From IMG/VR virus record IMGVR_UViG_3300017593_000998, positions 1-12,529 of that record: DNA of 12,529 nt; one strand, 5' to 3'. The position numbers and the translations under genes are program-made. Shown here piece after piece: positions 1 through 12,529 of this stretch (positions within the stretch are counted from its first letter, which is position 1; each line of letters starts with the position of its first letter). The notes beneath the pieces were generated by a model. The model was not told the origin of the DNA, did no database searches, and saw nothing but the letters and a program-made list of their open reading frames with translations.

Positions 1-1013
1 TCGCCACCGCACGACTCAACGCACTGGTCGTAGCTGTCCATCGCCGACTGGACGAAGTTGAGGTAGTACTTGAAGTTCTCGGAGCGCCTCGATTCCATCC
101 TATCAAAGGTCACGCACACGGTGGCCACTATGAGGGCCACGAGGATTAGTGCCACGATGTACCCCGGAATTGGCAGTCCGAGCCCGCCGACACGGCGCAC
201 CGGCATGTAAACTATGTATCCGTCGCTCGTCTCCTCGACGTACGGCCCGGTGACGGCCTTTCCAGAGTCCGTAGTGTAGGGCGTCGGGTCAAGCGCCAGC
301 CCGAAGCCCGCCAGCAGGTTCTGGATGTCGTCAATCTGGCCCTTTATCTTGCGCTCGTAGACGTACTCGGCCACCGAGCTGAAGCCCGGAATCTTGTAAA
401 CGATGCCCTCCGGCTTCTTGTAGTAGAACTTGAACACGTCCCTGTCGGCGGTGAGCGTGGTGAACGGCATATCGAGGAGCCTTGCCTCGTAGCCGACCCA
501 GTAGTAGCCGTCCGGGATGACTACCGTTTGCAGGTCCATGCACCCAAGTACCGGGTCGTAGCGCGTGCACACCTGCAACTGCCTGGTCTTTAGGTTGGAG
601 CTCGGGTAGCGGCCCCACATGACGCCCGACTTCCACTCCCTATACTGCGTTTCGAGCGGCCTGTCCTCCGGCTTGTTCAGCCCGGCGTAGAGCAGGTGGG
701 TCGCCGTCTTGTAGTCCACGAGCAGGACTGGAAACATGGTGGCGTACTGCCTGCCCTGCTCGTCCGTCTTGACGTAGTACTGGAGGAAGATACGGTGGAC
801 GTTCGGCGAGTAGCGCACCCTTATGTCGCCGATGACCTTCTCCTTGTACGTGCTGAGCACCTGCGACGGGATCTGGAAGGTCTCCGGGTCAAAGGGGACG
901 TACATCACAGTGCCCCAGCCCCCCACCTTGAAGAGGTTGAGCGCTGGCGCGTCAGTAGGTTCAAGGGGCGGGCTGACCGCTATCAGCTTACCCTCCTTAA
1001 CCAGCATGGTCAT
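1..1013 (-). CDS. Membrane protein, >337 aa, truncated by the window edge; contains a diverged copy of the W/Y-rich repeat domain and a TM helix (absent from the ORF track)
   Basis: ATG at 1013 after GGGGGAGGCGGTGA, 3 nt past the upstream stop. The frame is open to the window edge: MTMLVKEGKLIAVSPPLEP...LLYAGLNKPEDRPLETQYREWKSG...DGYYWVGYEARLL...GLPIPGYIVALILVALIVATVCVTF (TM)...DSYDQCVESCGG. Confidence 0.9.
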   Translation of the reverse strand, partial: MTMLVKEGKLIAVSPPLEPTDAPALNLFKVGGWGTVMYVPFDPETFQIPSQVLSTYKEKVIGDIRVRYSPNVHRIFLQYYVKTDEQGRQYATMFPVLLVDYKTATHLLYAGLNKPEDRPLETQYREWKSGVMWGRYPSSNLKTRQLQVCTRYDPVLGCMDLQTVVIPDGYYWVGYEARLLDMPFTTLTADRDVFKFYYKKPEGIVYKIPGFSSVAEYVYERKIKGQIDDIQNLLAGFGLALDPTPYTTDSGKAVTGPYVEETSDGYIVYMPVRRVGGLGLPIPGYIVALILVALIVATVCVTFDRMESRRSENFKYYLNFVQSAMDSYDQCVESCGG

Positions 1014-1016
1014 AAC

Positions 1017-1448
1017 TCACCGCCTCCCCCTAGTTCCAGCGTAGTCGAGCGCCAGCAGGATTAGGGCGTAAGCGCCGAGAAGCTTCAGCATCCCAATCAT
1101 GTTGCTCTTGCTGTCAACTGTCAGCTTTGCGGGGTACTGGACGAGGTACCACAAACCGTCGCTCTGGCAGTACTGCCTCTCCAGCTCAACGCCGTTCATC
1201 CAGTTCTGCACAATCTGGTCAACCGTATGGTCGGGTGGCTTGGAGGGGCTCTTGTAAATGACGCGCACCTTTGAAGGGTCGCCGTAGATTGTCAAATGAG
1301 CCCCCATCACGTCCGGGTTTACCTGCTTAACTATGTCGGTAACGTCAATTATTGGGCTGGTCTGGTTCGCCCATCTCACAAGGCGCGGGCTGTTCTTGTA
1401 GGTGTTCACCATCCCGCTTATGAGCGTCTCGACGCTACACTCCACCAT
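1017..1448 (-). CDS. 143-aa protein: one copy of the W/Y/C-rich repeat domain plus a C-terminal membrane anchor
   Basis: RBS GGAGGTGA 5 nt before ATG. Clearly homologous to the N-terminal domain of 2354..4390 (WANQxSP, DVT, LTIYGD, NWxxGVExERQYCQxDGxWY). Ends MIGMLKLLGAYALILLAL followed by RGRR. Confidence 0.9.
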   Translation of the reverse strand: MVECSVETLISGMVNTYKNSPRLVRWANQTSPIIDVTDIVKQVNPDVMGAHLTIYGDPSKVRVIYKSPSKPPDHTVDQIVQNWMNGVELERQYCQSDGLWYLVQYPAKLTVDSKSNMIGMLKLLGAYALILLALDYAGTRGRR

Positions 1449-1460
1449 GCTATCACCTCC

Positions 1461-1928
1461 TCAGCCGAACAGCAGTATGCCGCCGATAATCAGGGGCAGG
1501 AGCAGGTTGCCGCCCTCCTCCTCAGCGGGCGCCTGTGCCTCCCCCGTCGTCTCCGGTGTCTTTGTCGCCGTGCCCTGTATGGTGACGACGAAGCTGTCCC
1601 CGGCAATCTTCTCGCCGTCGGGCCCCCTGAACTCGACGACGAACCGCACCGGCCCGCTCACCGGCACGGCGTTACTGGGGCAAGTGATTGGGTAACCCGT
1701 CACCGTGTAGCCCTCGACGACGGTGCAGTAGGGCACCTGGACTGGAATCTCGACGTAGAGCGGCGGCTGGAGGTCGAGGACGGGGCTGGTCTGCCACTCA
1801 AGGCCGGCGCCCCTGACGACGAAGTACCCGCTGACCGGTGGCTGTGCGTAGTCGAGGACGACCTGGATGTTCATGACTTCGCCCGACCGATAGACAGACC
1901 TGTCGGGCCTCGCTGACATTACTACCAT
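1461..1928 (-). CDS. 155-aa protein: complete Ig-like domain, acidic linker and C-terminal TM anchor
   Basis: RBS GGAGGTGG. Ig-like opening PDRSVYRSGEVMNIQV. Last two strands GPVRFVVEFRG and EKIAGDSFVVTI. One Cys pair. Ends in hydrophobic LLLPLIIGGILLFG. Confidence 0.85.
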   Translation of the reverse strand: MVVMSARPDRSVYRSGEVMNIQVVLDYAQPPVSGYFVVRGAGLEWQTSPVLDLQPPLYVEIPVQVPYCTVVEGYTVTGYPITCPSNAVPVSGPVRFVVEFRGPDGEKIAGDSFVVTIQGTATKTPETTGEAQAPAEEEGGNLLLPLIIGGILLFG

Positions 1929-1944
1929 CTTTCACCACCTCCTT

Positions 1945-1999
1945 TGAAGGCTGGGGGCCCCCACCGTGGACGGCGGAGGGTCAGCCTCCGGCTCCTTCA
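1945..1999. other. GC-rich, highly self-complementary intergenic segment
   Basis: TGAAGG (1945-1950) and CCTTCA (1994-1999) enclose the palindrome TGGGGGCCCCCA (1952-1963), CCGTggACGG (1964-1973) and CGGAGG-gtcag-CCTCCG (1974-1990). Confidence 0.45.
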
Positions 2000-2332
2000 G
2001 ATTGGCACAGCGTAGTCCTCCGGAACGTACATACTGACGCTAACTGACCCGGTGTACGTTCCTGAAGTCGTCGGGGCCGTGAAGGTGAACGATTTGCTCC
2101 CTCTGCCTTTAGAGCCGACTGATATAGTGCCGCTCTGTGTCTTTCCGAATAGCTTGGCTATAATGGAGAAGTTTGCTGAAAACGGGTTGGGGTTGTCCAC
2201 TGTAACAGTTACCGTCACGGGCTCCCCCGGGGCAACTGCCGTTTTGTTTAGGGCTACGTCGAAGCTACCTTTTTGGGCCACCGGCTTCACGGTTACGCTC
2301 ATAGACCTGGTTCCCAGGCTAATCCACCCCAC
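1997..2332 (-). CDS. 111-aa protein: N-terminal putative donor strand plus a CARDB/Ig-like domain apparently lacking its last strand
   Basis: RBS GGGGGTGA upstream. Starts MGWISLGTRSMSVTV. Ig pattern LNKTAVAPGEPVTVTVTVDN...KSFTFTAPTTSGTYTGSVSVSMY, then only VPEDYAVPI*. Confidence 0.88.
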   Translation of the reverse strand: MGWISLGTRSMSVTVKPVAQKGSFDVALNKTAVAPGEPVTVTVTVDNPNPFSANFSIIAKLFGKTQSGTISVGSKGRGSKSFTFTAPTTSGTYTGSVSVSMYVPEDYAVPI

Positions 2333-2353
2333 TCATATCACCCCCTACAATTT

Positions 2354-4390
2354 TTAGTAATACGCGTAAAGCTCGACCTTAACCCCATGCTCACCCACCT
2401 TAACATCCGGGGGGACTGTTATTGGGGCCTCGATTATCGTCGGGCTTGTGGTTGCAGTGACCTCTTCTGACTCGTAGTGCCTGCCGAATGCGTCAATGCC
2501 GAGCTTGAACTTTAGACTACCCGGCGCCTCCCAGTTGACTTTTGCTATTATTTTCAGGGTGTCGCCGGCCGCTACTGTGGTCTTGTCAACGCTGGCCTCC
2601 CAGCCGATTGTTGGAGCTGTTACGTAAACCTGCTTTGACATTGCATAGAACCCACTATCAGAGTATCTAAGCAATATCAGCGTGAGCGTGTGGTAGCCAG
2701 TTGATAGTGGTGGTAGCTTTGCAACTTTCGTGAACCTTCTCTGCCCGGCCTTCCAAGCGTCGTAGTTGACCTCTACCTGGTCAACCAGCTTGCCGTCCAC
2801 GAATAGCTTCGCGCCCCAGGGCCTTTCGTAATGTGTCACGTACCCTCCAACGTCATAGTTGTAAGCCACAACTCTTACGTAACCCTCAACCCCAAACTCT
2901 ACTGTCCCATCGCTCCTTATATTTAGTATTGGAGTCGCCCTGGGTGCATTGTACTTAAATTCGGCCGGTATCTTGACCCAGTACCACTTTCCGCTCTTTG
3001 AAGAGTACATTCTTTCCATTTCGTAGCCTTCCAGCCAGCCCTTGACCACCTTAGTGCAGAAAGTATAACCATCGCTGTACCTGTCGGGCGGTTTGTCCCA
3101 GCCGTATTCAATGACTTCAATCTGGCTCGGCCTGTCTAGGTAGAGCTTCACCGTGCCGCCACTGGAGTAGTTGTCGTCTGCGTATCTTAGGCGGGTTCCG
3201 AATACAGTTATTTCGTCCAAGTATTCATAAGTTGGGTACTTTCTGTTCATCGTTGACTTCAGCTTGCTCTCGACGTTTATTGTCGGGGTCTTGCTCCCGT
3301 AGTAGGAGACGAGCGAGTTAACGAAGTCTTGGACAGAAGGCTCCTGGGTTCCCGGGATGACCCATGAGTACTGTGCACTCTCGTCCTCAACCCAGCCACC
3401 GCTGTAAAGCTCCACGAGGCCCTTGAGCGTGTACTTTCCGGGCAGGTTTGGCATCTTGAAGGTGAATGAGCCAGAAGTGCTCTTACCACTAGCAAGGTAG
3501 TACTCCTTCGAATACACCTGGACGACCTGAGAGTTCGGCTGTACCAGGAGAAACCTAAGCCTGAATTTGTAGCTCTTGTCCCAGCCGTTGGTGTGCGTCC
3601 AGTTTACAGTCACGGTCTCTCCAAGGCCGGGGTTGGACGGGCTAAGCTTGAAGGAGAACCTTTTCACCGTTACTGCCTCAGTCTCTATGTCGAGCTTGCA
3701 CGGGTAGAGAACCCAGTACCACTTTCCAGTCTTACTGCACTGTACCCTCTCCCACTCCTGGCCAGCCATCCAGTTCTCAACGATGTTCTTCAGCGCCTCA
3801 GTGCCGTACTTCTCAATGACGGCCGGCCTGCCGTCATAGTACTTATCTGGCTTGGTGTCGTACGGGCCGATTATCTTCTGGGGCTTGCTACGATAGACTG
3901 TAAGAGTGCCCCTTATGACCTTCGGCTGGACCACGTACTGGTCAACAATGCCAGTCACGTCAACAACCGCGTCCTGCTGAACAAAGTCATTCAGAACGCA
4001 GGGTAGGGTTAGGGTGCCCTGGACTTCGAGCTTGCACGGGTAGATGACCCAGTACCACTCGCCGTCCTCCTGGCAGTACTGGCGCTCGAACTCGACGCCT
4101 GCCAGCCAGTTGTGGAGGATGTTCCACCTCGCCCTGTCGCCGTACACGCCCACGTCGGCCGGCCTGCCGTCCGGGTACGTGGTGGGTTTTGTGGAGCCGG
4201 CCTTGACGATTTTTATCCTCGCAAGGTCGTCGCCGTAAATGGTAAGGGTGGCCTTGGTGACCTTTGGGCAGACCGCCCTGACCGTCTCGGTGACATCAAG
4301 GACTGGGGAGTACTGGTTAGCCCAGCTAATGGCAGTCTTGGAGTAGTTGTTCACCATTCCGTCCCTGAATATTTTAGCGTCGCACCCCAC
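2354..4390 (-). CDS. ~678-aa modular surface or spike protein: repeat-repeat-Ig-repeat-Ig-Ig (last Ig incomplete)
   Basis: Start moved to GTG at 4390: it follows RBS GAGAGGTGA, and MGCDAK parallels MVECSV of the 143-aa paralog. Three copies of the W-x-x-G-x-E-x-E-R...G-x-W-Y-W-V domain and three Ig-like segments. Ends GEHGVKVELYAYY*. No signal peptide or TM. Confidence 0.92.
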   Translation of the reverse strand: MGCDAKIFRDGMVNNYSKTAISWANQYSPVLDVTETVRAVCPKVTKATLTIYGDDLARIKIVKAGSTKPTTYPDGRPADVGVYGDRARWNILHNWLAGVEFERQYCQEDGEWYWVIYPCKLEVQGTLTLPCVLNDFVQQDAVVDVTGIVDQYVVQPKVIRGTLTVYRSKPQKIIGPYDTKPDKYYDGRPAVIEKYGTEALKNIVENWMAGQEWERVQCSKTGKWYWVLYPCKLDIETEAVTVKRFSFKLSPSNPGLGETVTVNWTHTNGWDKSYKFRLRFLLVQPNSQVVQVYSKEYYLASGKSTSGSFTFKMPNLPGKYTLKGLVELYSGGWVEDESAQYSWVIPGTQEPSVQDFVNSLVSYYGSKTPTINVESKLKSTMNRKYPTYEYLDEITVFGTRLRYADDNYSSGGTVKLYLDRPSQIEVIEYGWDKPPDRYSDGYTFCTKVVKGWLEGYEMERMYSSKSGKWYWVKIPAEFKYNAPRATPILNIRSDGTVEFGVEGYVRVVAYNYDVGGYVTHYERPWGAKLFVDGKLVDQVEVNYDAWKAGQRRFTKVAKLPPLSTGYHTLTLILLRYSDSGFYAMSKQVYVTAPTIGWEASVDKTTVAAGDTLKIIAKVNWEAPGSLKFKLGIDAFGRHYESEEVTATTSPTIIEAPITVPPDVKVGEHGVKVELYAYY
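3690..4059. repeat. 34-bp direct repeat (32/34 identical) at 3690-3723 and 4026-4059; a 17-bp part (3711-3727) recurs at 2976-2992
   Basis: tcgagcttgcacgggtaga(ga/tg)acccagtaccact, encoding the WYWV(L/I)YPCKL ends of the repeat domains. Confidence 0.85.
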
Positions 4391-4395
4391 TGCTA

Positions 4396-4557
4396 TCACC
4401 TCTCCCTAGACATTAGGGCTATCGCCAACCCAGCAGCACCAAGCACTAAGAGCAGGCCAGACCCCTTGTCACCAGTCGGCGAAGGCGTTGGGGAGGGGGT
4501 CGGTGTAACGACCTCCACCGAGAACGTCTTTGAACCAACTGGATACCAGCTAGCCAT
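4396..4557 (-). CDS. 53-aa micro-protein: putative donor strand, Pro/Thr linker and TM anchor (absent from the ORF track)
   Basis: RBS GGGGGTGG 4 nt before ATG. MASWYPVGSKTFSVEVVTPTPSPTPSPTGDKGSGLLLVLGAAGLAIALMSRER*. Its stop lies in the RBS of the next gene, so it fills the gap exactly. Confidence 0.88.
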   Translation of the reverse strand: MASWYPVGSKTFSVEVVTPTPSPTPSPTGDKGSGLLLVLGAAGLAIALMSRER

Positions 4558-4569
4558 TATACCACCCCC

Positions 4570-4677
4570 TCAGTAGTAGGCCTCCAGCCGGACTGAACCC
4601 TGGTAGGTTCCCGGGTTCTGCGGTGCGGTGAACGTGAATGTATGGTCCCAACCACGTGCCACGTCGCCATCCAGCAT
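4570..4677 (-). pseudogene. Frameshifted or internally deleted paralog of the 111-aa Ig-like subunit
   Basis: ATG at 4670 gives MATWHVVGT (donor-strand-like). A different frame (ATG 4677) gives MLDGDVARGWDHTFTFTAPQNPGTYQGSVRLEAYY*, whose end matches SFTFTAPTTSGTYTGSVSVSMY of 1997..2332. Confidence 0.65.
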
Positions 4678-4711
4678 CCCCCCTTTTTGTTGTACGTGTA
4701 ACTAAACTGGT

Positions 4712-5035
4712 TTAACCAAACATGTGGTTTAACGCCCAGATTAGCAGCCCGCTGGATATAGCAATTGAGATTATAACAGTGGCCCCTTTTACCTTGTCTC
4801 GAAAGGATTCCAGTTGCTCGACTTTAAGCTCCAGTTCTTTTATCCTCTGGTCGGTGTCTGCCTGGTACATTTCCACCATCTCCTTCAGTTCGTCATTGTT
4901 TTTTTCCAGCATGCTAATGATTTCATCGAGCCTGCTCTTAACCCATTCAAGGTCAGTAGATAGCTTGGCGATTGCCACCCCCATATCCATCATTTTTTGG
5001 CTGAGGCCGTTTCCGGAGTTCTCCCCGCTCCCCAC
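4712..5035 (-). CDS. 107-aa coiled-coil protein with C-terminal TM helix (architecture like XhlA/holin-type viral membrane proteins)
   Basis: RBS GGGGGCGG before GTG. Heptad-like LSTDLEWVKSRLDEI...IKELELKVEQLE, then hydrophobic ATVIISIAISSGLLIWAL. Confidence 0.8.
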   Translation of the reverse strand: MGSGENSGNGLSQKMMDMGVAIAKLSTDLEWVKSRLDEIISMLEKNNDELKEMVEMYQADTDQRIKELELKVEQLESFRDKVKGATVIISIAISSGLLIWALNHMFG

Positions 5036-5060
5036 GCTACCGCCCCCTTTACGCCGTTGG

Positions 5061-5348
5061 TCAGTCCCAGTCCTCCATCTCGGAGCGCTGGTCAGTGAGG
5101 CTCTGGTGCAGGACGTCGTGGAGCTGGGCCACGTCGAGCTTCAGCGCCTCCACGTCGTTGCGGAGCCTGGCGACCTCCTCGCTGAGCTGGCGGGCTTCCC
5201 TCTGCAAGTCCATGACCATGCTCTCAACCAGCTCGACCTTACCGTTGCTGACAGCTGAGCCGACCCTGCTGAACAGCCGGTACATGACCAGCGCCACGAG
5301 CGTCCCGCCGGCCAGCACCGAGACGAAGGCCCCCGTGTCAAACATCAC
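5061..5348 (-). CDS. ~95-aa protein with N-terminal TM helix and coiled coil
   Basis: AFVSVLAGGTLVALVMY, then heptads LQREARQLSEEVARLRNDVEALKLDVAQL. Overlaps the upstream stop. Start at GTG 5348 or ATG 5345. Confidence 0.8.
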   Translation of the reverse strand: MMFDTGAFVSVLAGGTLVALVMYRLFSRVGSAVSNGKVELVESMVMDLQREARQLSEEVARLRNDVEALKLDVAQLHDVLHQSLTDQRSEMEDWD

Positions 5349-5712
5349 TGCGCACCGCCCCCAGTGTTATCTTTTTCCTCAGCCAGCCGTCGGAGAGCGT
5401 TATGGTCACTCTGTGGCCGGCGAACTCCTGTGCCGCCAGCCACACCGTCGCCTCGTCGCACACTTCCAGCTCCACCGAGCCGTGCGCCTCCTGCTGACCG
5501 TCGCCCTCTATCAGGATGATGAAGTCGGTGCCAGGCACGTCAATCCCGACGTTCACGCACTTGAAGTACGGCCTTATCCAGACCCCGAATATCAAGCCGC
5601 CGCTCTTCGTCATCCTGACCTCGTTGCCCTCGACGCCTAGCAGTTTGTACTCTGCTGGCCCACGCCCGGAAAGGAAGTAAAGGAGCCGGCGGAGGAGTTC
5701 ACCGAACCTCAT
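5338..5712 (-). CDS. 124-aa hypothetical protein, beta-rich with an amphipathic N-terminus
   Basis: Fills the gap in the operon; starts 6 nt after the upstream stop. No family recognised. Confidence 0.7.
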   Translation of the reverse strand: MRFGELLRRLLYFLSGRGPAEYKLLGVEGNEVRMTKSGGLIFGVWIRPYFKCVNVGIDVPGTDFIILIEGDGQQEAHGSVELEVCDEATVWLAAQEFAGHRVTITLSDGWLRKKITLGAVRSDV

Positions 5713-5718
5713 AGCGCA

Positions 5719-6189
5719 TCACGGGAACGTTACTGTGACGTAGATGTCAAGCAGGATTGAGCTGTCCTTCGTTATGGCCGGGTCGATGGTCACGTGGTTG
5801 AACAGGGTTCCGGTAGTGTAGTCGTTGCCGTCCGTGTGCTCGTAGATGCCGGCCTCGGTGTAGGTGTAGCCGTTCGCGTCCTCCGGCAGGTAGCGGACGT
5901 AGTACTGGACTGTGTTGTTGCTCACGGTCACCTGTCCTGTCTTGGCAGAGCTGGGAACGGCGGTGAACAGGCCGGTGTCGTTTTCGCTCGGCGTCCCCGA
6001 GCCGGTTCCGAGGACGAGGAACCAGTTCGAGGAGCCCTGGCCCTGGCCCCACGCCTGGGCAAACATCTGCTTGGCGGCGGTCGTCAGGACGTTCTTCCTC
6101 TCCACAACGTTTACAACTTCGCCGGTCTCGGCGTCCCTGGCCACGAACTTCCAGGTCGCAACCGCCCCGACGGTTTCCCCAACCTTCAT
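5719..6189 (-). CDS. 156-aa virion protein, phage tail-collar/fibre-base-like (DUF3751-like), paralog A
   Basis: RBS GGGGGTGA. Motif chain NVLTTAAK...LVLGTGSGTP..NDTGL...EDANG...TEAGIY...GTLF...ITKD...LDIYVTV, typical of this widespread phage structural family (recognised by eye). Confidence 0.75.
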   Translation of the reverse strand: MKVGETVGAVATWKFVARDAETGEVVNVVERKNVLTTAAKQMFAQAWGQGQGSSNWFLVLGTGSGTPSENDTGLFTAVPSSAKTGQVTVSNNTVQYYVRYLPEDANGYTYTEAGIYEHTDGNDYTTGTLFNHVTIDPAITKDSSILLDIYVTVTFP

Positions 6190-6202
6190 AACATCACCCC
6201 CC

Positions 6203-6886
6203 TTATGGCAGTATTTTTATTGTGACATAAACGTCGAGTATGATGTCGGGCGTCTTCTCAATGCTCTGAGGGAGTAGGGCGTGTTCGAAGAGCACACCCG
6301 CCGTGTAGCGGTCGGGCGGGATGTAGTACTCGGCGTAGCTGTAGTCGCCGACCTGGTACCACTTCGGCGGTATGTTCTCGTAGATGCCGACCTCAGTGAA
6401 CGTGTAGCCGTTCAGCTCCTCGGGCATGTAGCGGACGTGGTACTGGAAGCCCCTGACCCCGCCCGTGCCGTCGAGGTACGTCAGGTCGGCGTCCGAGCCG
6501 TAGGGGAACGGCGTTATGTTCACGTGCCAGCCGCTCTGGTCGTGGGTGATGCTTATGGCCGCCCCGTCCTGGCCCTCCCCACGGGCGCTCTCGGGTACGG
6601 CCTGGAACAGGTCAGTGTCGCTCACGTCAGGCGTCCCGCTCCCGGTGCCGAGGACGAGCGCCCAGTACGGGCGGACATAGTAGCCGATGTCGTTTGGGCA
6701 GATAGGGTTTGAGGCCGGGTTGAGCCGTTTGGCCACGTACTTTCCCGTGAGCCAGGCCTGCCGGAGCAGGTCAGCGCCGGCGTTTGTTATGACGTTCTCG
6801 GTCGTTACCTCCTGCACCTTGCCCGTGCGGACGTTCGTCGCCACGACCCGGACGACGCCCTTAACTCCAAGCTCATCTACCCTCAT
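6203..6886 (-). CDS. 227-aa virion protein, tail-collar/fibre-base-like, paralog B with three insertions
   Basis: Start moved to ATG 6886 (RBS GGGGGTGG, directly after the upstream stop at 6888). Shares LVLGTGSGTP, AVPxSA, YxVRYxPExxNGYTxTExGIYE and ILLD/IILD with paralog A. Confidence 0.78.
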   Translation of the reverse strand: MRVDELGVKGVVRVVATNVRTGKVQEVTTENVITNAGADLLRQAWLTGKYVAKRLNPASNPICPNDIGYYVRPYWALVLGTGSGTPDVSDTDLFQAVPESARGEGQDGAAISITHDQSGWHVNITPFPYGSDADLTYLDGTGGVRGFQYHVRYMPEELNGYTFTEVGIYENIPPKWYQVGDYSYAEYYIPPDRYTAGVLFEHALLPQSIEKTPDIILDVYVTIKILP

Positions 6887-6887
6887 A

Positions 6888-8096
6888 TCAACCACCCCCG
6901 GCGTAGCGTTCAAACTTATTCAAGGTATAGTTTGTCGCCTCAGGCAGGCTCATGACGGATGGGTCGCTCTCGTCGGTCGTGTTGTTTGGGTTCAGCTCCA
7001 CGAAGAACCTCGTCTCGCTGTCAATGCCTATCCAGATGACCGCTTGTGGTGTTGAAGTGTCCCAAGTCTCGATGTAGTACGGCAGGCTGTAGCGTGCTGA
7101 GGCATACGCAATTCTAATGTCCGAGCCGTCAGCGTTTGCTTTTATGAAGTCAAAGTTCGAGCCGTCGAGGTCAATTGCAACTTGGAAGTGCTCTAGGTCA
7201 TAGTTGTTCGGGTTGGTGATTGTTATCTTACGGCGGTAGAGCCATCCGGAGATGTCGCTTGATTCTTCTTCGCCTACAACAATAGTTGGCTCTTGCTCGG
7301 CATACTTGCGGACACGAACCCAATCAATAAGCGTCTCCATACTTGCATCGTATGCACTTTTCTGAAATATCATCACGTAACCAGAGAAAGCATTTGTCTG
7401 CGTAATACTCGCTGTATTACCATCCCAATATCCTATATGTATATTCCCATCTGTCTTTATTCCTACTTGATGCCATTCGTTGCCCGTAATTGTCGCCAAC
7501 TCGCTTGATACCACTGAATTTCCGTCGTTAGAGACTATCCTTGTCGGATAACCCGAGCGGTATTTTAATTCCAGTCTTACGAGTGGTGCTTGCTCTGATG
7601 TCTGCGATGACGATAGTTCTAAGTGTACAGTATATGAACTCTTTAGCATAACCCTTGCCTCAACTACAAGAGGTTGTGTGAATGTGCGTTGTGTCGCCAA
7701 ATAGATTTTATTTGCAGCCCCTATACTTGTCTTAATGTCAAGTATGCTGTCTGATACTGTAATCGATGTCGAACCTTCTTCTACTAGTGTCCACTTTGTT
7801 GTGTCAACCGATGAACCCTCAAAATCATCATATAAGTCAAACACCTGCTCTGGGTCGCTCTCGCTCACCGCTGAGGGGTTTCCGTAGTAAACATACAAAT
7901 CAACGCTACTGTTAGCAGGGATTTTTGGCACTTTGACCCATACTTTTCCCTGCCCGTTTTGAGCGTCCCATTTTTCTATCCAGTACGGGAGTTTCCACGG
8001 CAAGCTCCACACCCTAACCGCTTCCCTCTTATTCTGAGCGTCGTCAAAAAACCTTTGAGCCGTAACCGTCAACTGCACCCTTTGAGTCGCCATCAC
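6888..8096 (-). CDS. ~401-aa DUF2341-containing protein with a central concanavalin/LamG-like beta-sandwich; candidate receptor-binding protein
   Basis: DUF2341-type motifs LPYWIEKWD...VWVKVPKIP...LYVYYGNPSA..SD...VF..YDDF, DWVRVRKY...EP, and WLYRRKITI...FQV.IDLD...FDF.KA..DGSDIR. Confidence 0.85.
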   Translation of the reverse strand: MMATQRVQLTVTAQRFFDDAQNKREAVRVWSLPWKLPYWIEKWDAQNGQGKVWVKVPKIPANSSVDLYVYYGNPSAVSESDPEQVFDLYDDFEGSSVDTTKWTLVEEGSTSITVSDSILDIKTSIGAANKIYLATQRTFTQPLVVEARVMLKSSYTVHLELSSSQTSEQAPLVRLELKYRSGYPTRIVSNDGNSVVSSELATITGNEWHQVGIKTDGNIHIGYWDGNTASITQTNAFSGYVMIFQKSAYDASMETLIDWVRVRKYAEQEPTIVVGEEESSDISGWLYRRKITITNPNNYDLEHFQVAIDLDGSNFDFIKANADGSDIRIAYASARYSLPYYIETWDTSTPQAVIWIGIDSETRFFVELNPNNTTDESDPSVMSLPEATNYTLNKFERYAGGG

Positions 8097-8104
8097 TCAC
8101 CACC

Positions 8105-9079
8105 TCACGTCACGCTATATTCGGCATACCACTCGCTTATGTCAAACGCACCCGTTCCGGCAGTCGTGGAGTAGTACTCCAGGGTGTCTAAGCTGTCTTG
8201 GGTTTCTTGAGGCGTTAGGGTCTGCACGGATACCACGTTTAGCGTTAGTTCGTCATAGGTGCTCTGCTGTTCGCTTATGCTGGAGGACATCATCACCTGA
8301 TATTCGGCGTACCACTCGCTTATGTCAAACGGCGTGCTGGCGGGCCCCGTTGATGTCAGCACCCTATCATGTGCATACACCGACTCGGCAAAGGCCCTGA
8401 TGACCAGCGCCTCATCGTCCTGCGGGACGTAGCCGGCCGGTATGTCGTCAGACCACTGGCGCTCGTCGAACCTCAGCACCTCGGCGGAGGCCGTGCTGGT
8501 GCCGAACGCCTCGCTTGTCTGTGCGGTCTCATCGAAGGTCAGCGTGACGGCCTGCGCCTGGTAGGTTGATATGCTGTCCTCGGGCACTACTGGCTCGTCA
8601 AAAGAGGGCGTGAGTATCTGGCCCGACCACACCTCGAAAGAAACCGAGTCGTCAATCGTCTCATCGAACGCCTGCACCACCACGTCGGCGGTCGAAACGG
8701 ATATTGAGGTGCCCGACTGCTGGGCTTCATCAAAGTATCTGCGCACGGCGTCGGCGGTCGTGTAGCTCAGGCCGTCGGTGCTGGTCTGCTCCTCTTCCAG
8801 CGCCCGAATTACCAGCGGTCTTGTCACGGCACCCACGTCTTCTTGTAGGACTTCAATTAACTCCTTAGCAATGTCGTCGTACGTGGCCACCACCACGGCG
8901 TCCCCGGCGCTCGCCATCTCACGGACGGTGTAGATGTATCGGTCTCTGATGACCACGAGCGTTATGTCGCCGCTGTGGTGCACTTCGGCCTCAACTGCCT
9001 TGCTGAGCAGGTCAATTAACCTCCTCGGCCCGAGCCTCGTACTGCCAACCTTCAGCACCGACGGCCAGCGCCCATTCAT
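8105..9079 (-). CDS. 324-aa acidic protein with about nine to ten ~22-aa repeats; candidate spike/fibre shaft or scaffold
   Basis: FDE recurs five times at exact 22-aa spacing, with further degenerate units. FDISEWYAEY occurs twice near the C-terminus. Confidence 0.85.
   Translation of the reverse strand: MNGRWPSVLKVGSTRLGPRRLIDLLSKAVEAEVHHSGDITLVVIRDRYIYTVREMASAGDAVVVATYDDIAKELIEVLQEDVGAVTRPLVIRALEEEQTSTDGLSYTTADAVRRYFDEAQQSGTSISVSTADVVVQAFDETIDDSVSFEVWSGQILTPSFDEPVVPEDSISTYQAQAVTLTFDETAQTSEAFGTSTASAEVLRFDERQWSDDIPAGYVPQDDEALVIRAFAESVYAHDRVLTSTGPASTPFDISEWYAEYQVMMSSSISEQQSTYDELTLNVVSVQTLTPQETQDSLDTLEYYSTTAGTGAFDISEWYAEYSVT
8117..8331. repeat. 32-bp direct repeat (31/32 identical) at 8117-8148 and 8300-8331
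   Basis: atattcggc(a/g)taccactcgcttatgtcaaacg, 183 bp apart and in frame, encoding FDISEWYAEY. Confidence 0.9.
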
Positions 9080-9082: not shown

Positions 9083-9415
9083 TCAACCCACCCACATGAC
9101 GTAAATCTTCTGCGCCGTGCTCTGGCTGACGACGTAAACCTTCCCGAGGTTGTCAATCACGATGTCAACGCTCTCGCCAGGGTCGAGGGCAAAACCTGTT
9201 CCAGAGCTTACTGAGCTGTCGAAGCCGATGTAAACGGCGTCCGTGTTGCCCTTGTCCGCCTTGATGGTGACCATCTTCACCTCCAGCGCCCCGAGGGCGG
9301 TCGGCGTCGTGCTGACCGTGAACTGGAACGTCCCGCCCTTCGAGGGCGAGCTCACGGCCCCCGCAACCGCCTGCTCCAACAGGTCGTAGTCAATCCTTGT
9401 GGACTTACCGAGCAT
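9083..9415 (-). CDS. 110-aa small jelly-roll-like virion protein (vertex/spike-base type)
   Basis: RBS GAGGTGGTGA. The pattern VTIKA..GN...VYIG...V..G.GF.L.PGES..I.IDNL.KVY is one I associate with small viral beta-barrel proteins. Confidence 0.75.
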   Translation of the reverse strand: MLGKSTRIDYDLLEQAVAGAVSSPSKGGTFQFTVSTTPTALGALEVKMVTIKADKGNTDAVYIGFDSSVSSGTGFALDPGESVDIVIDNLGKVYVVSQSTAQKIYVMWVG

Positions 9416-9426
9416 CTTTCACCACC

Positions 9427-9987
9427 TCACGGCAGGAACCCCTCGTACTCCCTTATTATCCTCGGCGCCGGGGCCGGCAGTCCGGGCGTGGGCGGCTGTG
9501 CTGGCACCTGTACCTGCAACTGCGGCATCAGCGCCCTGAGCGACCCTATGAACAAATCCATGTTGGTGACCCTGATGAGCAGGACCTCGTAGTTCAGCGT
9601 GGCGTCGCTTGAGCCGCCGATAAGCTCAATCCTCATCCTGCCCTTGATGGCCAGCGGCGGGTTCGGCGAGAGCTCCACGGCGTACTCGTTCGTGCCCGGC
9701 GAATAGACCGCAACGAAGGGCATGGTCGAGGTGAAGGTGTAGCCCTTGCCCTCCAGCTCACTCGCTATCAGCCGGAACTCCGTGGTGCTACCGAAGGCCG
9801 GGTCGTACTCAATCCTCAGCCCTGCGTCCGGCACGTTGGAGGTCACCCTTGCCCCGATGAACCACCCTGCCTCCTCGTCGGGTGAGGAGTAAACCTCCTT
9901 CTTCTTGCCCGCCTCGACCGGCTCGGTGTCCACGTACCGTATTTCCGTCCAGCCCTCAAGGAGCGGGAGCATACTCAGCAGGTCCAT
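9427..9987 (-). CDS. 186-aa beta-rich protein with a Pro-rich tail; candidate penton or minor capsid protein
   Basis: Start moved to ATG 9987 (MDLLSMLP; RBS GGAGGAGTGA, 4 nt after the upstream stop). Alternating strands GWFIGARVTS, GLRIEYD, YAVELSPNPPL, GRMRIELI, NYEVLLIRV. The fold is inferred. Confidence 0.7.
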   Translation of the reverse strand: MDLLSMLPLLEGWTEIRYVDTEPVEAGKKKEVYSSPDEEAGWFIGARVTSNVPDAGLRIEYDPAFGSTTEFRLIASELEGKGYTFTSTMPFVAVYSPGTNEYAVELSPNPPLAIKGRMRIELIGGSSDATLNYEVLLIRVTNMDLFIGSLRALMPQLQVQVPAQPPTPGLPAPAPRIIREYEGFLP

Positions 9988-9991
9988 GTTA

Positions 9992-10564
9992 TCACTCCTC
10001 CCACCATTCAATTCTGACGCAGTACTTCGCAGTCTTGTCGGACGTGTTCTCAACCTCTATGTATATGCCGTGGCCCTCCAGTATCTGCCCTGCCATGCCT
10101 CTGGTCGCCGGCGCCCCTGTGGCCCACTTGCCGGAACCGCCGGGCAGTAGGGTCTCGGTGTACTCCGTGGTGTAACCACTGTACGTTCCGCCGTGCTCGA
10201 ACACCACTACCGACGTGGCGTTGCCGCCAACGAGCTTTCCAAGCACAGGTATCGCCGTGCCGCTGGAGTCAATCGTCGGGTCGTGGTGTATCCTGACAAC
10301 GCCCTCTGCCCCGCCGAACACCAGCAGGGCCTTGACGTAGAGCGACTTGCCGCTCCCCTGCGGGTTGATGAAGACGAAGCCGTGGGTGTCGCCGGAGTCA
10401 ATGTCCACTACCTTGGCCGCCGCAAAGCCCTTGTCAGCCATGACGATTGAGCTCCACACGTCGTCGGTCTTAGCCGTGTCGGCCACGACTATCTTGTCGT
10501 TGATTTCTGCAACGTTGGGGTCAGAGCGGAAGGCGCCCGTTTTCATCACCTCCGGGCGCCTCAC
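9992..10564 (-). CDS. ~184-190-aa beta-sandwich virion protein (NPxGSG...WWEE pattern, reminiscent of DUF6143)
   Basis: FINPQGSGKSLYVK and C-terminal VRIEWWEE. Start uncertain (GTG 10564 overlapping the upstream stop, or ATG 10546). The family resemblance is from memory and unverified. Confidence 0.7.
   Translation of the reverse strand: MRRPEVMKTGAFRSDPNVAEINDKIVVADTAKTDDVWSSIVMADKGFAAAKVVDIDSGDTHGFVFINPQGSGKSLYVKALLVFGGAEGVVRIHHDPTIDSSGTAIPVLGKLVGGNATSVVVFEHGGTYSGYTTEYTETLLPGGSGKWATGAPATRGMAGQILEGHGIYIEVENTSDKTAKYCVRIEWWEE
10531..10561 (-). promoter_or_regulatory. 9-bp GC-rich hairpin enclosing the RBS and ATG of the ~190-aa gene
   Basis: Minus strand AGGCGCCCG-GAGGTGATGAAAA-CGGGCGCCT, beginning at the last base of the upstream stop codon. 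Confidence 0.5.
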
Positions 10565-10872
10565 TCAAGCACGTACGTTATCGTGATGTGGACATCGCTG
10601 GCGGCGTCGGCGACCGCCTTGAGCTCGAACCCCCTGTCGAGGTCGTAAATCATCGAGTTGTTGTTTATGTGCGAGGAGCTCTGGGCGAGCGGTATGACTG
10701 CCAGGGTTTTGCTGACGCTCCCGTCCGGCGAAACCTGCCTCAGCGTTATCTTCACGTCGGCGGTCCCGACGTTGTAGGCCTCTATCATCTTCACGACTAC
10801 CTTCCTGTGCTTCGGCGGCTTCACGATGGAAACCTCATCGGTCGTGGTCAGCTCAACGTGCTTGGTCGGCAT
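10561..10872 (-). CDS. 103-aa small jelly-roll-like virion protein
   Basis: RBS GGGGGTG. About eight short strands (KVVVKMIEAYN, VKITLRQ, TLAVIPL, IYDLDRG, ELKAVAD, VHITITY). Confidence 0.75.
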   Translation of the reverse strand: MPTKHVELTTTDEVSIVKPPKHRKVVVKMIEAYNVGTADVKITLRQVSPDGSVSKTLAVIPLAQSSSHINNNSMIYDLDRGFELKAVADAASDVHITITYVLE

Positions 10873-10875
10873 TCA

Positions 10876-11532
10876 TCACACCCCCGTACCCATCCTCTCG
10901 TTCCAGAGCTTGGCGGCGTAGTTCATCAGGTCGGAGCCAACCAGCTTGACCAGCCACTGCGGGGCGCTGTACGGCTCAAGGAACGTGTATATCTTGCACT
11001 TCTTCTTGCCGTCGATGAGCGCCTCGATGTCCTTGGTGTCCCTAACGACCCTGTACGTGTACTTGGCCACGTGGAAGGCGAGCATGGCGTAGATGTCGTC
11101 GGTGTCCGGGTTGTGGACGTTGAAGCTCGGGTAGAGGTCCTGGAAGGTTATGAGTTCACTCTTGGCGTCCGGCTCCTCGAACGGGCTGGTAACGCCGTCA
11201 AGCCACTTGGTCGCTCCGGGGACCCTCCTCGTGCCCCTGAGGTTGAACCTGTCCACCTGCGGCGGGAAGCGTAGGTAAACCTCTGCAACCTCCGGGGCGA
11301 CGCCGACGAAGGCCTGGAGGATGAACCTCTGCTGTTCTGGGTCAAGGATGTGGTCGTTGTACTCGTTCTTGGGCTCGAACCAGTCGCTGGTCTGGCCTGC
11401 CGAAACCTTGCCGACCTCATACGGCTCGTAGGTGACAATCTCCCTGCCGGTTATTCTGAAGAACACGGGGCCTTCCCTGAAGGCCACGGCCAGATGGTGC
11501 CCTGGCTTCAGAAACTCAGGCTTCTCATACAC
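10876..11532 (-). CDS. 218-aa hypothetical virion protein directly downstream of the candidate major capsid gene
   Basis: Start moved to GTG 11532 (GGAGGTG plus 6 nt); the track start at 11541 lies inside the RBS. Strong GC3 bias, beta-rich core, helical C-terminus. Confidence 0.85.
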   Translation of the reverse strand: MYEKPEFLKPGHHLAVAFREGPVFFRITGREIVTYEPYEVGKVSAGQTSDWFEPKNEYNDHILDPEQQRFILQAFVGVAPEVAEVYLRFPPQVDRFNLRGTRRVPGATKWLDGVTSPFEEPDAKSELITFQDLYPSFNVHNPDTDDIYAMLAFHVAKYTYRVVRDTKDIEALIDGKKKCKIYTFLEPYSAPQWLVKLVGSDLMNYAAKLWNERMGTGV

Positions 11533-11611
11533 GGCTAACACCTCCTTCGGGTGCTTTTAAAGTGCCGAGAACAGTCGTCTCGGCCTTCTCTCTCGTCGGC
11601 CTTCCGTTCAC
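11525..11611 (-). CDS. Possible 28-aa micro-ORF MNGRPTREKAETTVLGTLKAPEGGVSRV
   Basis: GTG at 11611 preceded by GGGGTGG; the stop overlaps the next start (GTGTATGA). Could be chance. Confidence 0.25.
   Translation of the reverse strand: MNGRPTREKAETTVLGTLKAPEGGVSRV
11554..11584 (-). promoter_or_regulatory. Possible TATA box (TTTAAAA) with an adjacent 7-7-7 inverted repeat
   Basis: TTTAAAA at 11561-11555, about 25 nt before the GTG. GCCGAGA-N7-TCTCGGC at 11564-11584. No purine-rich BRE. Confidence 0.3.
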
Positions 11612-11639
11612 CTTTGCACCACCCCTTCTCTCTCGTCGG
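11584..11639. repeat. Perfect 16-bp direct repeat ccttctctctcgtcgg at 11584-11599 and 11624-11639
   Basis: Read directly; 40-bp spacing, in the largest intergenic gap. Confidence 0.9.
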
Positions 11640-11647
11640 GGTTTGTT

Positions 11648-11658
11648 AAAAAGAAAAA
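11648..11658 (-). terminator. Archaeal oligo-T terminator TTTTTCTTTTT
   Basis: Begins 10 nt after the stop of 11669..12352; stands out in GC-rich DNA. Confidence 0.7.
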
Positions 11659-11668
11659 GGTTTCAGGT

Positions 11669-12352
11669 TCAGAAGTTGGCCTTGAGGAACCTGCCGCGTC
11701 CAACGACAACGCCGAGGAGCTTAATCTTGCCGGTGGTCGGGGTGCCGCTGTCGTAGTCCGGGCTGTGGACCTCAATCTTGAAGTACTCCTTGGGGAGCAC
11801 CGGTATGGCGTTGAAGTTCCAGGCCGGAACGTCGTTCCTGTTGTCAGTGAGGATGGCGTTGCTGACATCGAGCGGCAGGAGGCTCCTCTGGCCGACCTGG
11901 ACGCGTATTCCGTCGGTCCTGGCGGTGATGGTGTCGCCGTCGTAGAGGTCGATGATGCCGAAGACTATCATACCAACGTCGTCGTTGAGGCTACCCTCGG
12001 CGAGGGTGACCCACTCGGTGGCGTAGGTTATCTTGAAGTAGGCGCCGTCGGCGGTGACGGCTGAGCCAAGGAGGCTGTTGCCACCGTTGTCCTTGAGGTG
12101 CGCCGGCCTTACCGGGGCAAAGCCGAGCTCCATGTCCTCGGCGAGCTGGCCGCCGAAGGTCGGGTTTCCGAGGGCGAACTTGACGGCCTCGACGAAGCCC
12201 CTTATCTGGTTCTTGTAGGTCTGAAGGAGCTCATAGACAACTCCGTCCTTCGGGCCGAAGAGGTTGTCAATCTGGACGCTGAACTTGGCCTCCTCCTTCC
12301 CGACGAGCGGGGTGGCGTTGAGGTCCCTATCGATACTCTCAAACCTGACCAT
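11669..12352 (-). CDS. 227-aa candidate major capsid protein (helical N-terminus plus beta-rich, possibly single jelly-roll domain)
   Basis: Start moved to ATG 12352 (GGAGGTGA plus 5 nt). Very strong GC3 bias, its own terminator, and position near the start of the structural block. The CDS is solid; the capsid role is inference only. Confidence 0.6.
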   Translation of the reverse strand: MVRFESIDRDLNATPLVGKEEAKFSVQIDNLFGPKDGVVYELLQTYKNQIRGFVEAVKFALGNPTFGGQLAEDMELGFAPVRPAHLKDNGGNSLLGSAVTADGAYFKITYATEWVTLAEGSLNDDVGMIVFGIIDLYDGDTITARTDGIRVQVGQRSLLPLDVSNAILTDNRNDVPAWNFNAIPVLPKEYFKIEVHSPDYDSGTPTTGKIKLLGVVVGRGRFLKANF

Positions 12353-12365: not shown

Positions 12366-12529
12366 TCAGTACAGGAACTCCTCCTCAACCGGTGCGGGGG
12401 CTGGCTGGGCCGGGGCCACCGGAGTAACAGTCAGGGTGACTGGCTGGGCCGGGGCGTAGGTGCTCATGGCCGCCTGCTCCCAGGTGAGTCCGAGGCTGGC
12501 GCCGACCTTGTTGGCAAGGTCATCAGGGC
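12366..12529 (-). CDS. C-terminal part of an upstream protein with a Pro/Ala-rich tail (absent from the ORF track)
   Basis: ...PDDLANKVGASLGLTWEQAAMSTYAPAQPVTLTVTPVAPAQPAPAPVEEEFLY*. The stop abuts the next RBS. APAQP is encoded by a 16-bp repeat at 12401-12416 and 12440-12455. Confidence 0.8.
   Translation of the reverse strand, partial: PDDLANKVGASLGLTWEQAAMSTYAPAQPVTLTVTPVAPAQPAPAPVEEEFLY

What the first reader, a model, noticed from the sequence alone, without database searches (positions are those of the whole stretch)
9083..12352. Run of different beta-barrel-like proteins after an unrecognised capsid candidate: possibly an undescribed archaeal virus lineage
Seen: six consecutive beta-rich proteins (227, 218, 103, ~190, 186 and 110 aa). 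The first is set apart by a strong RBS and its own terminator. It is short for a double jelly-roll MCP, and I see no HK97-like or spindle-virus hydrophobic MCP features. Inference: a single-jelly-roll icosahedral virus, comparable in design to Halopanivirales or Portogloboviridae, but I cannot match it to either by sequence.
Basis: inference. Interest (0 to 1): 0.62.

Follow-up and report, generated by a model that had tools for sequence, protein, structure and literature searches.

The report
Structural genes of unclassified archaeal virus
The six small genes are real and open the virion-building gene block of an unclassified hot-vent archaeal virus whose relatives have 34-39 kb genomes. The first two proteins are a conserved jelly-roll-type pair and the best capsid candidates, but the shape of the virus particle is not established.

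Summary
The six ORFs exist as described: 227, 218, 103, 184, 186 and 110 aa, all on the minus strand. The window is a fragment of a virus. Relatives with the same gene order include two complete IMG/VR genomes of 39.2 and 33.8 kb.

- **p2 (218 aa):** the model is weak but jelly-roll-like.
- **Conservation:** p1 and p2 are the best-conserved proteins and travel as a pair in distant lineages. p0-p3 form the core. p4-p6 are mosaic and replaceable.
- **Downstream genes:** a DUF2341 lectin and fibre-like proteins are shared with betalipothrixviruses.
- **Hallmark genes:** the complete relatives have no TerL, portal, HK97 capsid, FtsK or A32 ATPase.
- **Databases:** no Pfam, PHROG, PDB or GenBank-phage relative was found for p1 or p2.

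The [quoted passage not shown] reading is partly supported. An icosahedral single-jelly-roll virion is plausible but unproven. A filamentous or membrane-based virion, with capsid proteins encoded just upstream of the window, is a serious rival. The 2026 preprint family "Shabalaviridae" could not be excluded.

The parts
12366..12527 (-). p0: C-terminal 53 aa of a conserved 143-153-aa protein. It has a Gly-rich hydrophobic N-terminal half (outside the window), then a Pro/Ala/Val-rich linker, then a conserved acidic-aromatic C-terminal tail.
   Evidence: Full-length homologues sit directly upstream of p1 in every relative. Sequence character and conserved tail. No Pfam or PHROG hit.
11669..12352 (-). 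p1, 227 aa: three N-terminal helices plus a jelly-roll beta-sandwich. It is the best major-shell-protein candidate.
11533..11668 (-). p1-p2 spacer. It holds a T-rich tract right after the p1 stop (about 11648-11659), two exact 16-nt direct repeats (11584-11599 and 11624-11639), a hairpin (11564-11584), a TTTAAAAG TATA-like box (about 11554-11561) and the GGAGGT site of p2.
   Evidence: Read. Repeats. Hairpin. Function as archaeal terminator plus promoter is inferred, not tested.
10876..11532 (-). p2, 218 aa: beta-rich with C-terminal helices. It is the most conserved protein of the module and the constant partner of p1.
10561..10872 (-). p3, 103 aa: third conserved core protein, fold untested.
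   Evidence: 43-57% identity in relatives. hhalign 99% to the L017 homologue. Only a sub-threshold CARDB (Ig-like) hit, E 0.039.
9992..10546 (-). p4, 184 aa: variable accessory structural protein with a conserved WWEE C-terminus.
   Evidence: 28-39% identity in relatives and relocated in L011. Replaced by 513 unrelated bases in a variant in run X6. C-terminus.
9427..9987 (-). p5, 186 aa: variable accessory protein with a Pro-rich linker and an invariant C-terminal GFLP.
   Evidence: 28-43% identity. C-terminal motif in all six homologues compared.
9083..9415 (-). p6, 110 aa: small accessory protein.
   Evidence: 44-86% identity in four relatives and absent from L011, L013 and L017. Weak hit to phrog_30212, E 1e-3. 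Relatives carry an extra 141-aa gene before it.
8105..9079 (-). p7, 324 aa: acidic repeat-bearing protein of variable length (322-496 aa in relatives).
6888..8096 (-). p8, 402 aa: lectin-like protein with two DUF2341 (ConA-like) domains. Probable host-glycan binder. It lies in a low-GC, highly polymorphic stretch.
   Evidence: Pfam DUF2341, E 7.6e-35. Similar to AFV9 ORF1170 residues 630-756, E 1e-8. GC 0.456 at 7001-8000. Many variants and joints in reads. A beta-helix protein occupies this part of the module in L011.
6203..6886 (-). p9, about 227 aa from the ATG at 6886: fibre-like protein, paralogue of p10.
   Evidence: hhalign p9-p10 probability 100%. PHROG 18275, 5417 and 4176 'tail fiber protein'. 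AFV9 ORF164, E 7e-14.
5719..6189 (-). p10, 156 aa: fibre-base-like protein, homologue of betalipothrixvirus ORF164.
   Evidence: phrog_5417 E 1e-17. Pfam Phage_tail_fib N-terminal domain E 5.5e-4, below cut-off. 31-33% identity over 95% of its length to eight Betalipothrixvirus records.
3..5712 (-). Rest of the late module: p11; p12 and p13 (coiled coils with TM anchors); p14 (TM); p15 (681 aa, weak Ig-like CARDB hit); p16 (Ig-like, BatD-like); p17 (C-terminal TM); p18; p19 (truncated; its family has a 300-aa domain plus two TM segments).

Best explanation
The window is a fragment of the late (virion) gene block of an uncultivated dsDNA virus of a hyperthermophilic vent archaeon, probably Thermococcales-like. 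Complete relatives have circular-mapping genomes of about 34-39 kb.

**Replication and DNA-modification genes in relatives.** A giant primase-domain protein, a UvrD helicase, DpdA and a DNA methylase.

**Conserved head of the late block.** Three small basic proteins and the hydrophobic p0 are followed by p1, p2 and p3.

**Most likely roles (inferred).**
- p1 and p2, both jelly-roll-type and always paired, build the outer protein shell.
- p1 is made in excess, through a terminator placed after its gene.
- p3 is a further core shell or vertex component.
- p4-p6 are exchangeable accessory parts, such as vertex, cement or spike-base proteins.
- p7-p10 (DUF2341 lectin, fibre-like paralogues) bind the host surface.
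- The membrane-anchored proteins downstream, together with p0, suggest a lipid layer.

No packaging ATPase or portal exists. The genome would therefore be condensed by the basic proteins and enclosed during assembly, as in Portogloboviridae, rather than pumped into a preformed capsid.

**Shown versus inferred.** Shown: gene reality, conservation pattern, the p1 fold class, absence of hallmark genes, and shared fibre genes. Inferred: the capsid role of p1 and p2, icosahedral shape, a membrane, the packaging mode and the host.
For: - **Gene reality and synteny.**
- **Complete relatives.** G001 is 39,192 bp and G002 is 33,792 bp. Both have terminal repeats and CheckV 100%.
- **Circular map.** G001's repeat is 127 nt. 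The MEGAHIT k141 contig of the same genome is 14 nt longer, so both repeats equal assembler k-mers.
- **p1 fold.**
- **p2 model.**
- **Conservation.** p1 and p2 are the most conserved proteins, at 63-73% identity against 28-42% for p4 and p5. They are paired in distant lineages.
- **T-rich tract after p1.**
- **No hallmark genes.** TerL_ATPase, Terminase_6N, Phage_capsid, Phage_portal, FtsK_SpoIIIE and Pox_A32 are all absent in six-frame searches of both complete genomes. The only Walker A motif in G001 is in the UvrD helicase.
- **Primase domain.**
- **DpdA, UvrD and methylase.**
- **Basic upstream proteins and p0.**
- **TM proteins.**
- **Lectin and fibre genes.**
- **Origin and codon use.** Vent metagenomes. 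AGR makes up 67% of Arg codons, and ATA is the commonest Ile codon at GC3 0.76.
- **Portogloboviridae design.** PMC8459092.
Against: - BFVD matches are mostly to minor-tail and fibre proteins.
- The three best ESM Atlas shape matches (TM 0.58-0.75) are unnamed clusters labelled mainly Uroviricota.
- The p2 model is of low confidence.
- Distant p1 relatives lie in cellular-looking neighbourhoods. One is alone between TiaS and SMC-ScpAB in L014. One is with p2 next to sugar-biosynthesis genes in L016.
- p3-p6 and the upstream proteins were not folded.
- No evidence of icosahedral symmetry, of a membrane or of the host was obtained.
Confidence: 0.45

Rival explanations
1. The virion is not an icosahedral jelly-roll shell. 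It is filamentous (Adnaviria-like), spindle-shaped or pleomorphic and membrane-based. Its true major capsid proteins are the small basic proteins (144-176 aa) and/or the hydrophobic p0, encoded just upstream and mostly outside the window. On this reading p1-p6 are terminal, fibre or envelope-associated proteins.
For: - p9/p10 and p8 are homologous to the adjacent ORF164 and ORF1170 of betalipothrixviruses, whose genomes are 38-41 kb.
- Three conserved basic proteins (pI 9.2-10) and a Gly-rich hydrophobic protein precede p1 in all relatives.
- Many membrane-anchored proteins are present.
- There is no packaging ATPase.
- The p1 fold resembles CBM and receptor-binding heads of tail proteins.
- p1 relatives occur in cellular contexts.
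Against: - hhalign finds no similarity between the upstream proteins or p0 and the AFV9 capsid proteins ORF167 and ORF204, with probabilities below 8%.
- No Pfam or PHROG hit supports it.
- p1 and p2 are the most conserved proteins of the module, unlike receptor-binding proteins.
- Lectin and fibre genes move between morphotypes in Thermococcales viruses (PMC12934983).
Confidence: 0.28
2. The contig belongs to, or is a large-genome sister of, the candidate family 'Shabalaviridae' (Catchpole et al. 2026 preprint). That family comprises tailless icosahedral Thermococcales viruses whose nine-gene core holds seven jelly-roll proteins, with a double jelly-roll capsid protein nested among them. On this reading the lineage is already described.
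For: - The preprint's description fits: a run of conserved single-jelly-roll proteins interrupted by a slot holding either a beta-helix protein or a DUF2341 ConA protein.
- The same alternation is seen here, with DUF2341 in the window, L010 and L012, and a beta-helix in L011.
- Several related contigs bear sample names beginning REYS or JOHN, which may tie them to that preprint's authors' vent metagenomes. This is my reading of the names, not a tested link.
Against: - Shabalaviruses are 15-16.7 kb circles with MCM or AEP replication modules and ParB-like genes. The complete relatives here are 33.8 and 39.2 kb and carry a giant primase protein, UvrD and DpdA.
- Neither p1 nor p2 models as a double jelly-roll.
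- p19, the largest conserved protein left, is a two-TM membrane protein.
- No sequences of that family were available for comparison.
Confidence: 0.15
3. The element is not a virus. It would be a plasmid-like element, or p1-p3 would encode a cellular or element-borne surface or intracellular assembly, for example jelly-roll pilus-like fibres.
For: - No viral hallmark gene was recognised.
- The preprint classed communities without a recognisable capsid protein as probable plasmids.
- p1 and p2 relatives occur in cellular-looking loci.
Against: - A long one-directional block holds more than 20 small structural-type genes with lectin, Ig-like and fibre domains.
- Homologues occur in bona fide archaeal viruses.
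- DpdA-type DNA modification is present.
- IMG/VR and CheckV treat the relatives as complete viral genomes.
- No conjugation or partition genes were seen among the proteins scanned.
Confidence: 0.08

Closest known systems
Portogloboviridae (Sulfolobus polyhedral virus 1)
   Same: - It is a hyperthermophilic archaeal dsDNA virus with a circular genome.
[quoted passage not shown] No packaging ATPase is described there, and its absence is from my own knowledge of the family.
- Here there is also a pair of jelly-roll-type proteins, basic proteins next to them, membrane proteins and no ATPase.
   Different: - Genomes are 34-39 kb against 20 kb.
- This lineage has its own primase and helicase, whereas SPV1 has no replication genes.
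- The host habitat differs (marine vents against terrestrial Sulfolobales).
- The SPV1 genome was not in the searchable collection, so VP1 and VP10 were not compared.
'Shabalaviridae', candidate family of Thermococcales viruses (PMC12934983, preprint 2026)
   Same: A run of small conserved jelly-roll proteins. A variable slot holding a DUF2341 lectin or a beta-helix spike. Vent Thermococcales setting.
   Different: That family has 15-16.7 kb genomes, a double jelly-roll capsid protein like chaacvirus MCP-2, and MCM/AEP and ParB-like genes. None of these was found here. Sequence comparison was not possible.
Halopanivirales (Sphaerolipoviridae, Matsushitaviridae; realm Singelaviria)
   Same: Two adjacent capsid-candidate genes with jelly-roll-type folds. 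Membrane proteins lie in the structural block.
   Different: There is no FtsK-HerA packaging ATPase. No P23-77 or HCIV-1 capsid chain appears among the 50 best structural matches of p1 or p2.
Betalipothrixvirus (AFV3, 6, 7, 8, 9; Adnaviria)
   Same: Homologues of p9/p10 (ORF164) and of the DUF2341 region of p8 (ORF1170) are adjacent in AFV9. Genome size is similar at 38-41 kb. There is no packaging ATPase.
   Different: No other gene is shared by BLAST. No similarity to the two alpha-helical capsid proteins was found. Those genomes are linear with inverted repeats, whereas these map as circles.

Membership tests
Caudoviricetes (Duplodnaviria) | HK97-fold major capsid protein | tested here: not met
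   The p1 and p2 models are sandwiches with no HK97 match. Pfam Phage_capsid is absent in six-frame searches of G001 and G002.
Caudoviricetes (Duplodnaviria) | Large terminase and portal | tested here: not met
   TerL_ATPase, Terminase_6N and Phage_portal are absent from both complete relatives. The only Walker A motif is in UvrD. Very divergent versions cannot be excluded.
Halopanivirales (Singelaviria) | FtsK-HerA superfamily packaging ATPase | tested here: not met
   FtsK_SpoIIIE and Pox_A32 are absent. No spare P-loop protein exists in G001.
Halopanivirales (Singelaviria) | Two vertical single-jelly-roll capsid proteins encoded side by side | tested here: inconclusive
   p1 and p2 are adjacent, always paired and jelly-roll-like. 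There is no specific match to P23-77, HCIV-1 or SH1 proteins. The complex prediction gave no answer.
Portogloboviridae | VP4/VP10-type single-jelly-roll shell proteins | tested here: inconclusive
   [not shown]
Portogloboviridae | Circular genome of about 20 kb, VP1 nucleoprotein, Sulfolobales host | tested here: not met
   Relatives are 33.8-39.2 kb and come from vent metagenomes. VP1 homology was not testable because the record is not held.
Varidnaviria, including 'Shabalaviridae', 'Yamaviridae' and STIV-like viruses | [quoted passage not shown] | tested here: inconclusive
   p1 and p2 each model as one sandwich. p19 is a membrane protein. p7, p15 and the remaining proteins of the relatives were not folded.
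'Shabalaviridae' | 15-16.7 kb circular genome with a nine-gene core | tested here: not met
   Complete relatives are 33.8 and 39.2 kb. The core could not be compared because no sequences were available.
Adnaviria (Lipothrixviridae) | Pair of alpha-helical DNA-wrapping capsid proteins | tested here: inconclusive
   hhalign of the four upstream families against AFV9 ORF167 and ORF204 gave probabilities below 8%. No structure models were made. Only fibre and lectin genes are shared.

The most novel reading that the evidence does not exclude
A family-level or higher lineage of hyperthermophilic archaeal viruses with these features:
- circular genomes of 34-39 kb;
- a giant primase protein;
- a shell built from a previously unseen pair of jelly-roll proteins (p1 and p2), assembled without any packaging ATPase around a protein-condensed genome.

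This would be a Portoglobovirus-like design arising independently in Thermococcales-type hosts. Relatives of the capsid pair also sit in archaeal chromosomes. That would give a test case either for capsid proteins recruited from cellular jelly-roll proteins or for capsid proteins taken over by cells.
Probability: 0.25. Interest if true: 0.75.

Novelty: new variant of a known kind. Interest (0 to 1): 0.55.

Why it matters
Until recently only spindle-shaped viruses and pTN3-like elements were known for Thermococcales. Icosahedral archaeal viruses that lack a packaging motor are known only from Portogloboviridae.

A well-conserved p1/p2 family now has 51 sequence clusters and two complete genomes, yet no Pfam, PHROG or PDB relative. 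It is a concrete target for structure determination and for defining a new virus family.

p1/p2 homologues in cellular-looking loci bear on how capsid proteins arise from, or return to, cellular genes.

If the lineage turns out to be one of the families named in the 2026 preprint, the finding is mainly an annotation of its structural module.

Tried and rejected
- **Pfam and PHROGs.** Scans of all 20 window proteins gave nothing above threshold for p1-p6.
- **GenBank phages and plasmids.** tblastn of p1, p2 and two distant p1 relatives against 50,697 phage records found no match. Megablast of the window against phages and plasmids found none.
- **PDB sequences.** Profile searches with 16- and 35-sequence p1 alignments gave only chance hits or none.
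- **IMG/VR.** Scans with two distant relatives found none.
- **ESM Atlas feature search of p2.** Scores were 0.82 or lower and uninformative.
- **Paralogy.** All-against-all hhalign of the window's families found only p9-p10 related. p1-p6 are not detectable paralogues.
- **Complex prediction of p1 with p2.** No answer (score 0.00, below the mark). This is neither for nor against binding.
- **Cluster look-ups for names.** None carried a useful name.
- **SPV1 genome fetch.** The record is not held.
- **tRNA and Rfam scans.** Nothing found.
- **Bacterial promoter and terminator scan.** No more sites than in shuffles.
- **p19 as a hidden double jelly-roll capsid protein.** Rejected, because the family is a two-TM membrane protein.
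- **Giant upstream protein as portal or terminase.** Rejected, because it carries a primase domain and no Walker A motif.

Full report
**What is in the window**

The 12.5-kb window is a whole contig held as a virus record. All its genes run on the minus strand in one tight block. The six ORFs of the finding are confirmed:
- p1: 12352-11669, 227 aa.
- p2: 11532-10876, 218 aa.
- p3: 10872-10561, 103 aa.
- p4: 10546-9992, 184 aa.
- p5: 9987-9427, 186 aa.
- p6: 9415-9083, 110 aa.

Upstream, the contig starts inside another gene, p0. Downstream follow:
- p7, 324 aa, acidic and repeat-bearing.
- p8, 402 aa, with two DUF2341 lectin domains (E 7.6e-35).
- The paralogues p9 and p10, which are fibre-like.
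- Coiled-coil proteins with membrane anchors, and Ig-like proteins.
- A truncated membrane protein, p19.

p1 has a good Shine-Dalgarno site, but so do most genes here. What does set p1 apart is the only sizeable gap in the six-gene run. It is a 127-nt spacer that begins with a T-rich tract directly after the stop. It also holds two exact 16-nt direct repeats, a hairpin and a TTTAAAAG box before p2.

**Relatives and genome type**

p1 has 16 close clusters (58-71% identity) in the large protein collection. All are from metagenome contigs and have the same gene order. Two relatives are complete IMG/VR genomes with terminal repeats and CheckV 100%: G001 at 39,192 bp and G002 at 33,792 bp.

G001's repeat is 127 nt. 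An independent MEGAHIT k141 assembly of the same genome is 14 nt longer. Both overlaps therefore equal assembler k-mers, and the genome maps as a circle of about 39.07 kb. This is inference.

G001 encodes:
- a 1679-aa protein with a primase domain (phrog_19458, E 1e-34);
- a UvrD-type helicase;
- DpdA;
- an N6/N4 DNA methylase.

Six-frame Pfam searches of both complete genomes find no TerL_ATPase, Terminase_6N, Phage_capsid, Phage_portal, FtsK_SpoIIIE or Pox_A32. The only Walker A motif in G001 is in the helicase.

The window itself is held by hydrothermal-vent metagenome runs from several studies. Codon use looks hyperthermophile-archaeal to me: AGR is 67% of Arg codons, and ATA is the commonest Ile codon despite GC3 0.76. 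That reading rests on my own knowledge, and the host is not proven.

**The proteins**

p1 was folded with a 16-sequence alignment and gives a confident model (pLDDT 83, pTM 0.81). It has three N-terminal helices followed by an 11-strand sandwich. All structure searches return jelly-roll-class sandwiches without a clear winner:
- Foldseek on PDB: birnavirus VP2, Cry domain III and CBMs at E about 4e-4, TM about 0.3.
- BFVD: minor-tail and fibre proteins.
- ESM Atlas: three unnamed clusters with real shape similarity (TM 0.75, 0.61, 0.58), whose few labelled members are mostly tailed-virus labelled.

The fold class is therefore established. A capsid role is not.

**Conservation pattern**

- p2 (65-73% identity) and p1 (63-67%) are the most conserved proteins.
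- p3 is intermediate (43-52%).
- p4 and p5 are poorly conserved (28-42%).
- p6 is absent from some relatives.
- L011 has other genes, including a beta-helix protein, between p3 and its p5- and p4-like genes.
- Contigs of public runs show variants with p4 swapped for unrelated sequence, an extra gene before p6, and p3-to-p6 joints.

An exhaustive profile search finds 51 clusters of p1 relatives, most of them 205-254 aa. None hits PHROGs or PDB. In distant members a p2 homologue again follows (hhalign 99.4-100%).

The unit is therefore p0-p1-p2-p3, with p1 and p2 as a constant pair. It is not six equivalent barrels.

**Counter-evidence to a simple capsid reading**

- Some distant p1 relatives lie in cellular-looking loci. 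One is alone between TiaS and SMC-ScpAB on a 39% GC contig. One is with p2 beside nucleotide-sugar genes.
- p9/p10 and part of p8 are homologous to the adjacent ORF164 and ORF1170 of betalipothrixviruses. Those are filamentous enveloped viruses with 38-41 kb genomes.
- Upstream of p1, every relative has three basic proteins (pI 9.2-10) and the Gly-rich hydrophobic p0. In a filamentous or spindle virus these would be the natural capsid candidates.
- hhalign finds no link to the AFV9 capsid proteins. That test is weak at this evolutionary distance.

**Literature**

A 2026 preprint (PMC12934983) mined vent metagenomes for Thermococcales viruses and names 19 candidate families. Several related contigs carry sample names beginning REYS or JOHN. 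I read these as possibly from that preprint's authors' samples, but this was not tested.

Its 'Shabalaviridae' resemble this module in words. They have nine core genes, seven of them jelly-roll, and a slot with a beta-helix or DUF2341 protein. But they have 15-16.7 kb genomes, a double jelly-roll capsid protein and MCM/AEP replication modules. Communities without a recognisable capsid protein were set aside there as probable plasmids. I could not compare sequences, so whether this lineage is one of those families, or one of the set-aside communities, is open.

The Portogloboviridae profile (PMC8459092) gives the nearest known design: two single-jelly-roll shell proteins, a membrane and a nucleoprotein core.

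**Verdict**

p1 is a jelly-roll protein. With p2 it is the best shell candidate (about 0.45-0.5), but the virion shape is unproven. The comparison with Halopanivirales fails on the ATPase. The comparison with Portogloboviridae holds only as an analogy.

The lineage has no relative among isolated viruses and no family assignment that I could verify. I rate it a new variant of a known kind, of moderate interest.

Noticed in passing
window 11584-11599 and 11624-11639 (p1-p2 spacer); hairpin 11564-11584: Two exact copies of a 16-nt direct repeat lie 40 nt apart, between the T-rich tract after p1 and a TATA-like box before p2. They may be a regulator-binding site controlling read-through into p2. 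Read variants show small indels and skips exactly here.
   Followed up: partly
window 5719-6886 (p9, p10) and 6888-8096 (p8); L018 (AFV9) 28414-33366: p9 and p10 are paralogues homologous to ORF164 of five betalipothrixviruses. p8's DUF2341 region matches the neighbouring ORF1170 of AFV9. A lectin-plus-fibre cassette is therefore shared between a vent virus and Sulfolobales filamentous viruses.
   Followed up: yes
window 7001-8000, inside p8: GC drops to 0.456, against 0.58-0.62 around it. This stretch also has the densest read polymorphism and several skip joints (7316-7854). It looks like a hypervariable or recently exchanged receptor-binding segment.
   Followed up: partly
C-termini of p0 (window 12366-12400), p5 (9427-9470) and p4 (9992-10010), and their homologues: Three conserved short C-terminal tails follow flexible linkers. 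p0 ends in acidic residues plus an aromatic-x-aromatic motif after a Pro/Ala-rich linker. p5 always ends in GFLP after a Pro-rich linker. p4 ends in WWEE, or YWED in L011. They may be docking peptides for assembly.
   Followed up: no
L014 3949-4596; L016 3568-5040: Distant p1 relatives occur in cellular-looking contexts. In L014 one sits alone between TiaS and SMC-ScpA-ScpB on a 39% GC archaeal-type contig. In L016 one sits with a p2 homologue between UbiA/PKD genes and a nucleotide-sugar biosynthesis cluster. They may be provirus remnants or cellular homologues of the pair.
   Followed up: partly
L003 2755-7794 and homologues in L011, L012, L013, L015, L017: A giant protein of 970-1867 aa has a primase domain near its N-terminus and about 1000 residues with no recognisable domain and no Walker A motif. 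It is always placed directly before the basic-protein genes and p0-p1.
   Followed up: partly
window 8105-9079 (p7): This acidic protein (pI 4.1) has an internally repeated FDISEWYAEY-type motif and repeated FDE segments. Its length varies from 322 to 496 aa among relatives.
   Followed up: no
run X6-X8 ('organism A', one sample): Runs labelled with an organism name rather than 'metagenome' hold a related variant at about 90-95% identity on a 3.2-kb contig. In it p4 is replaced and an extra 402 nt sits before p6. This may point to an enrichment or culture that carries the virus.
   Followed up: partly
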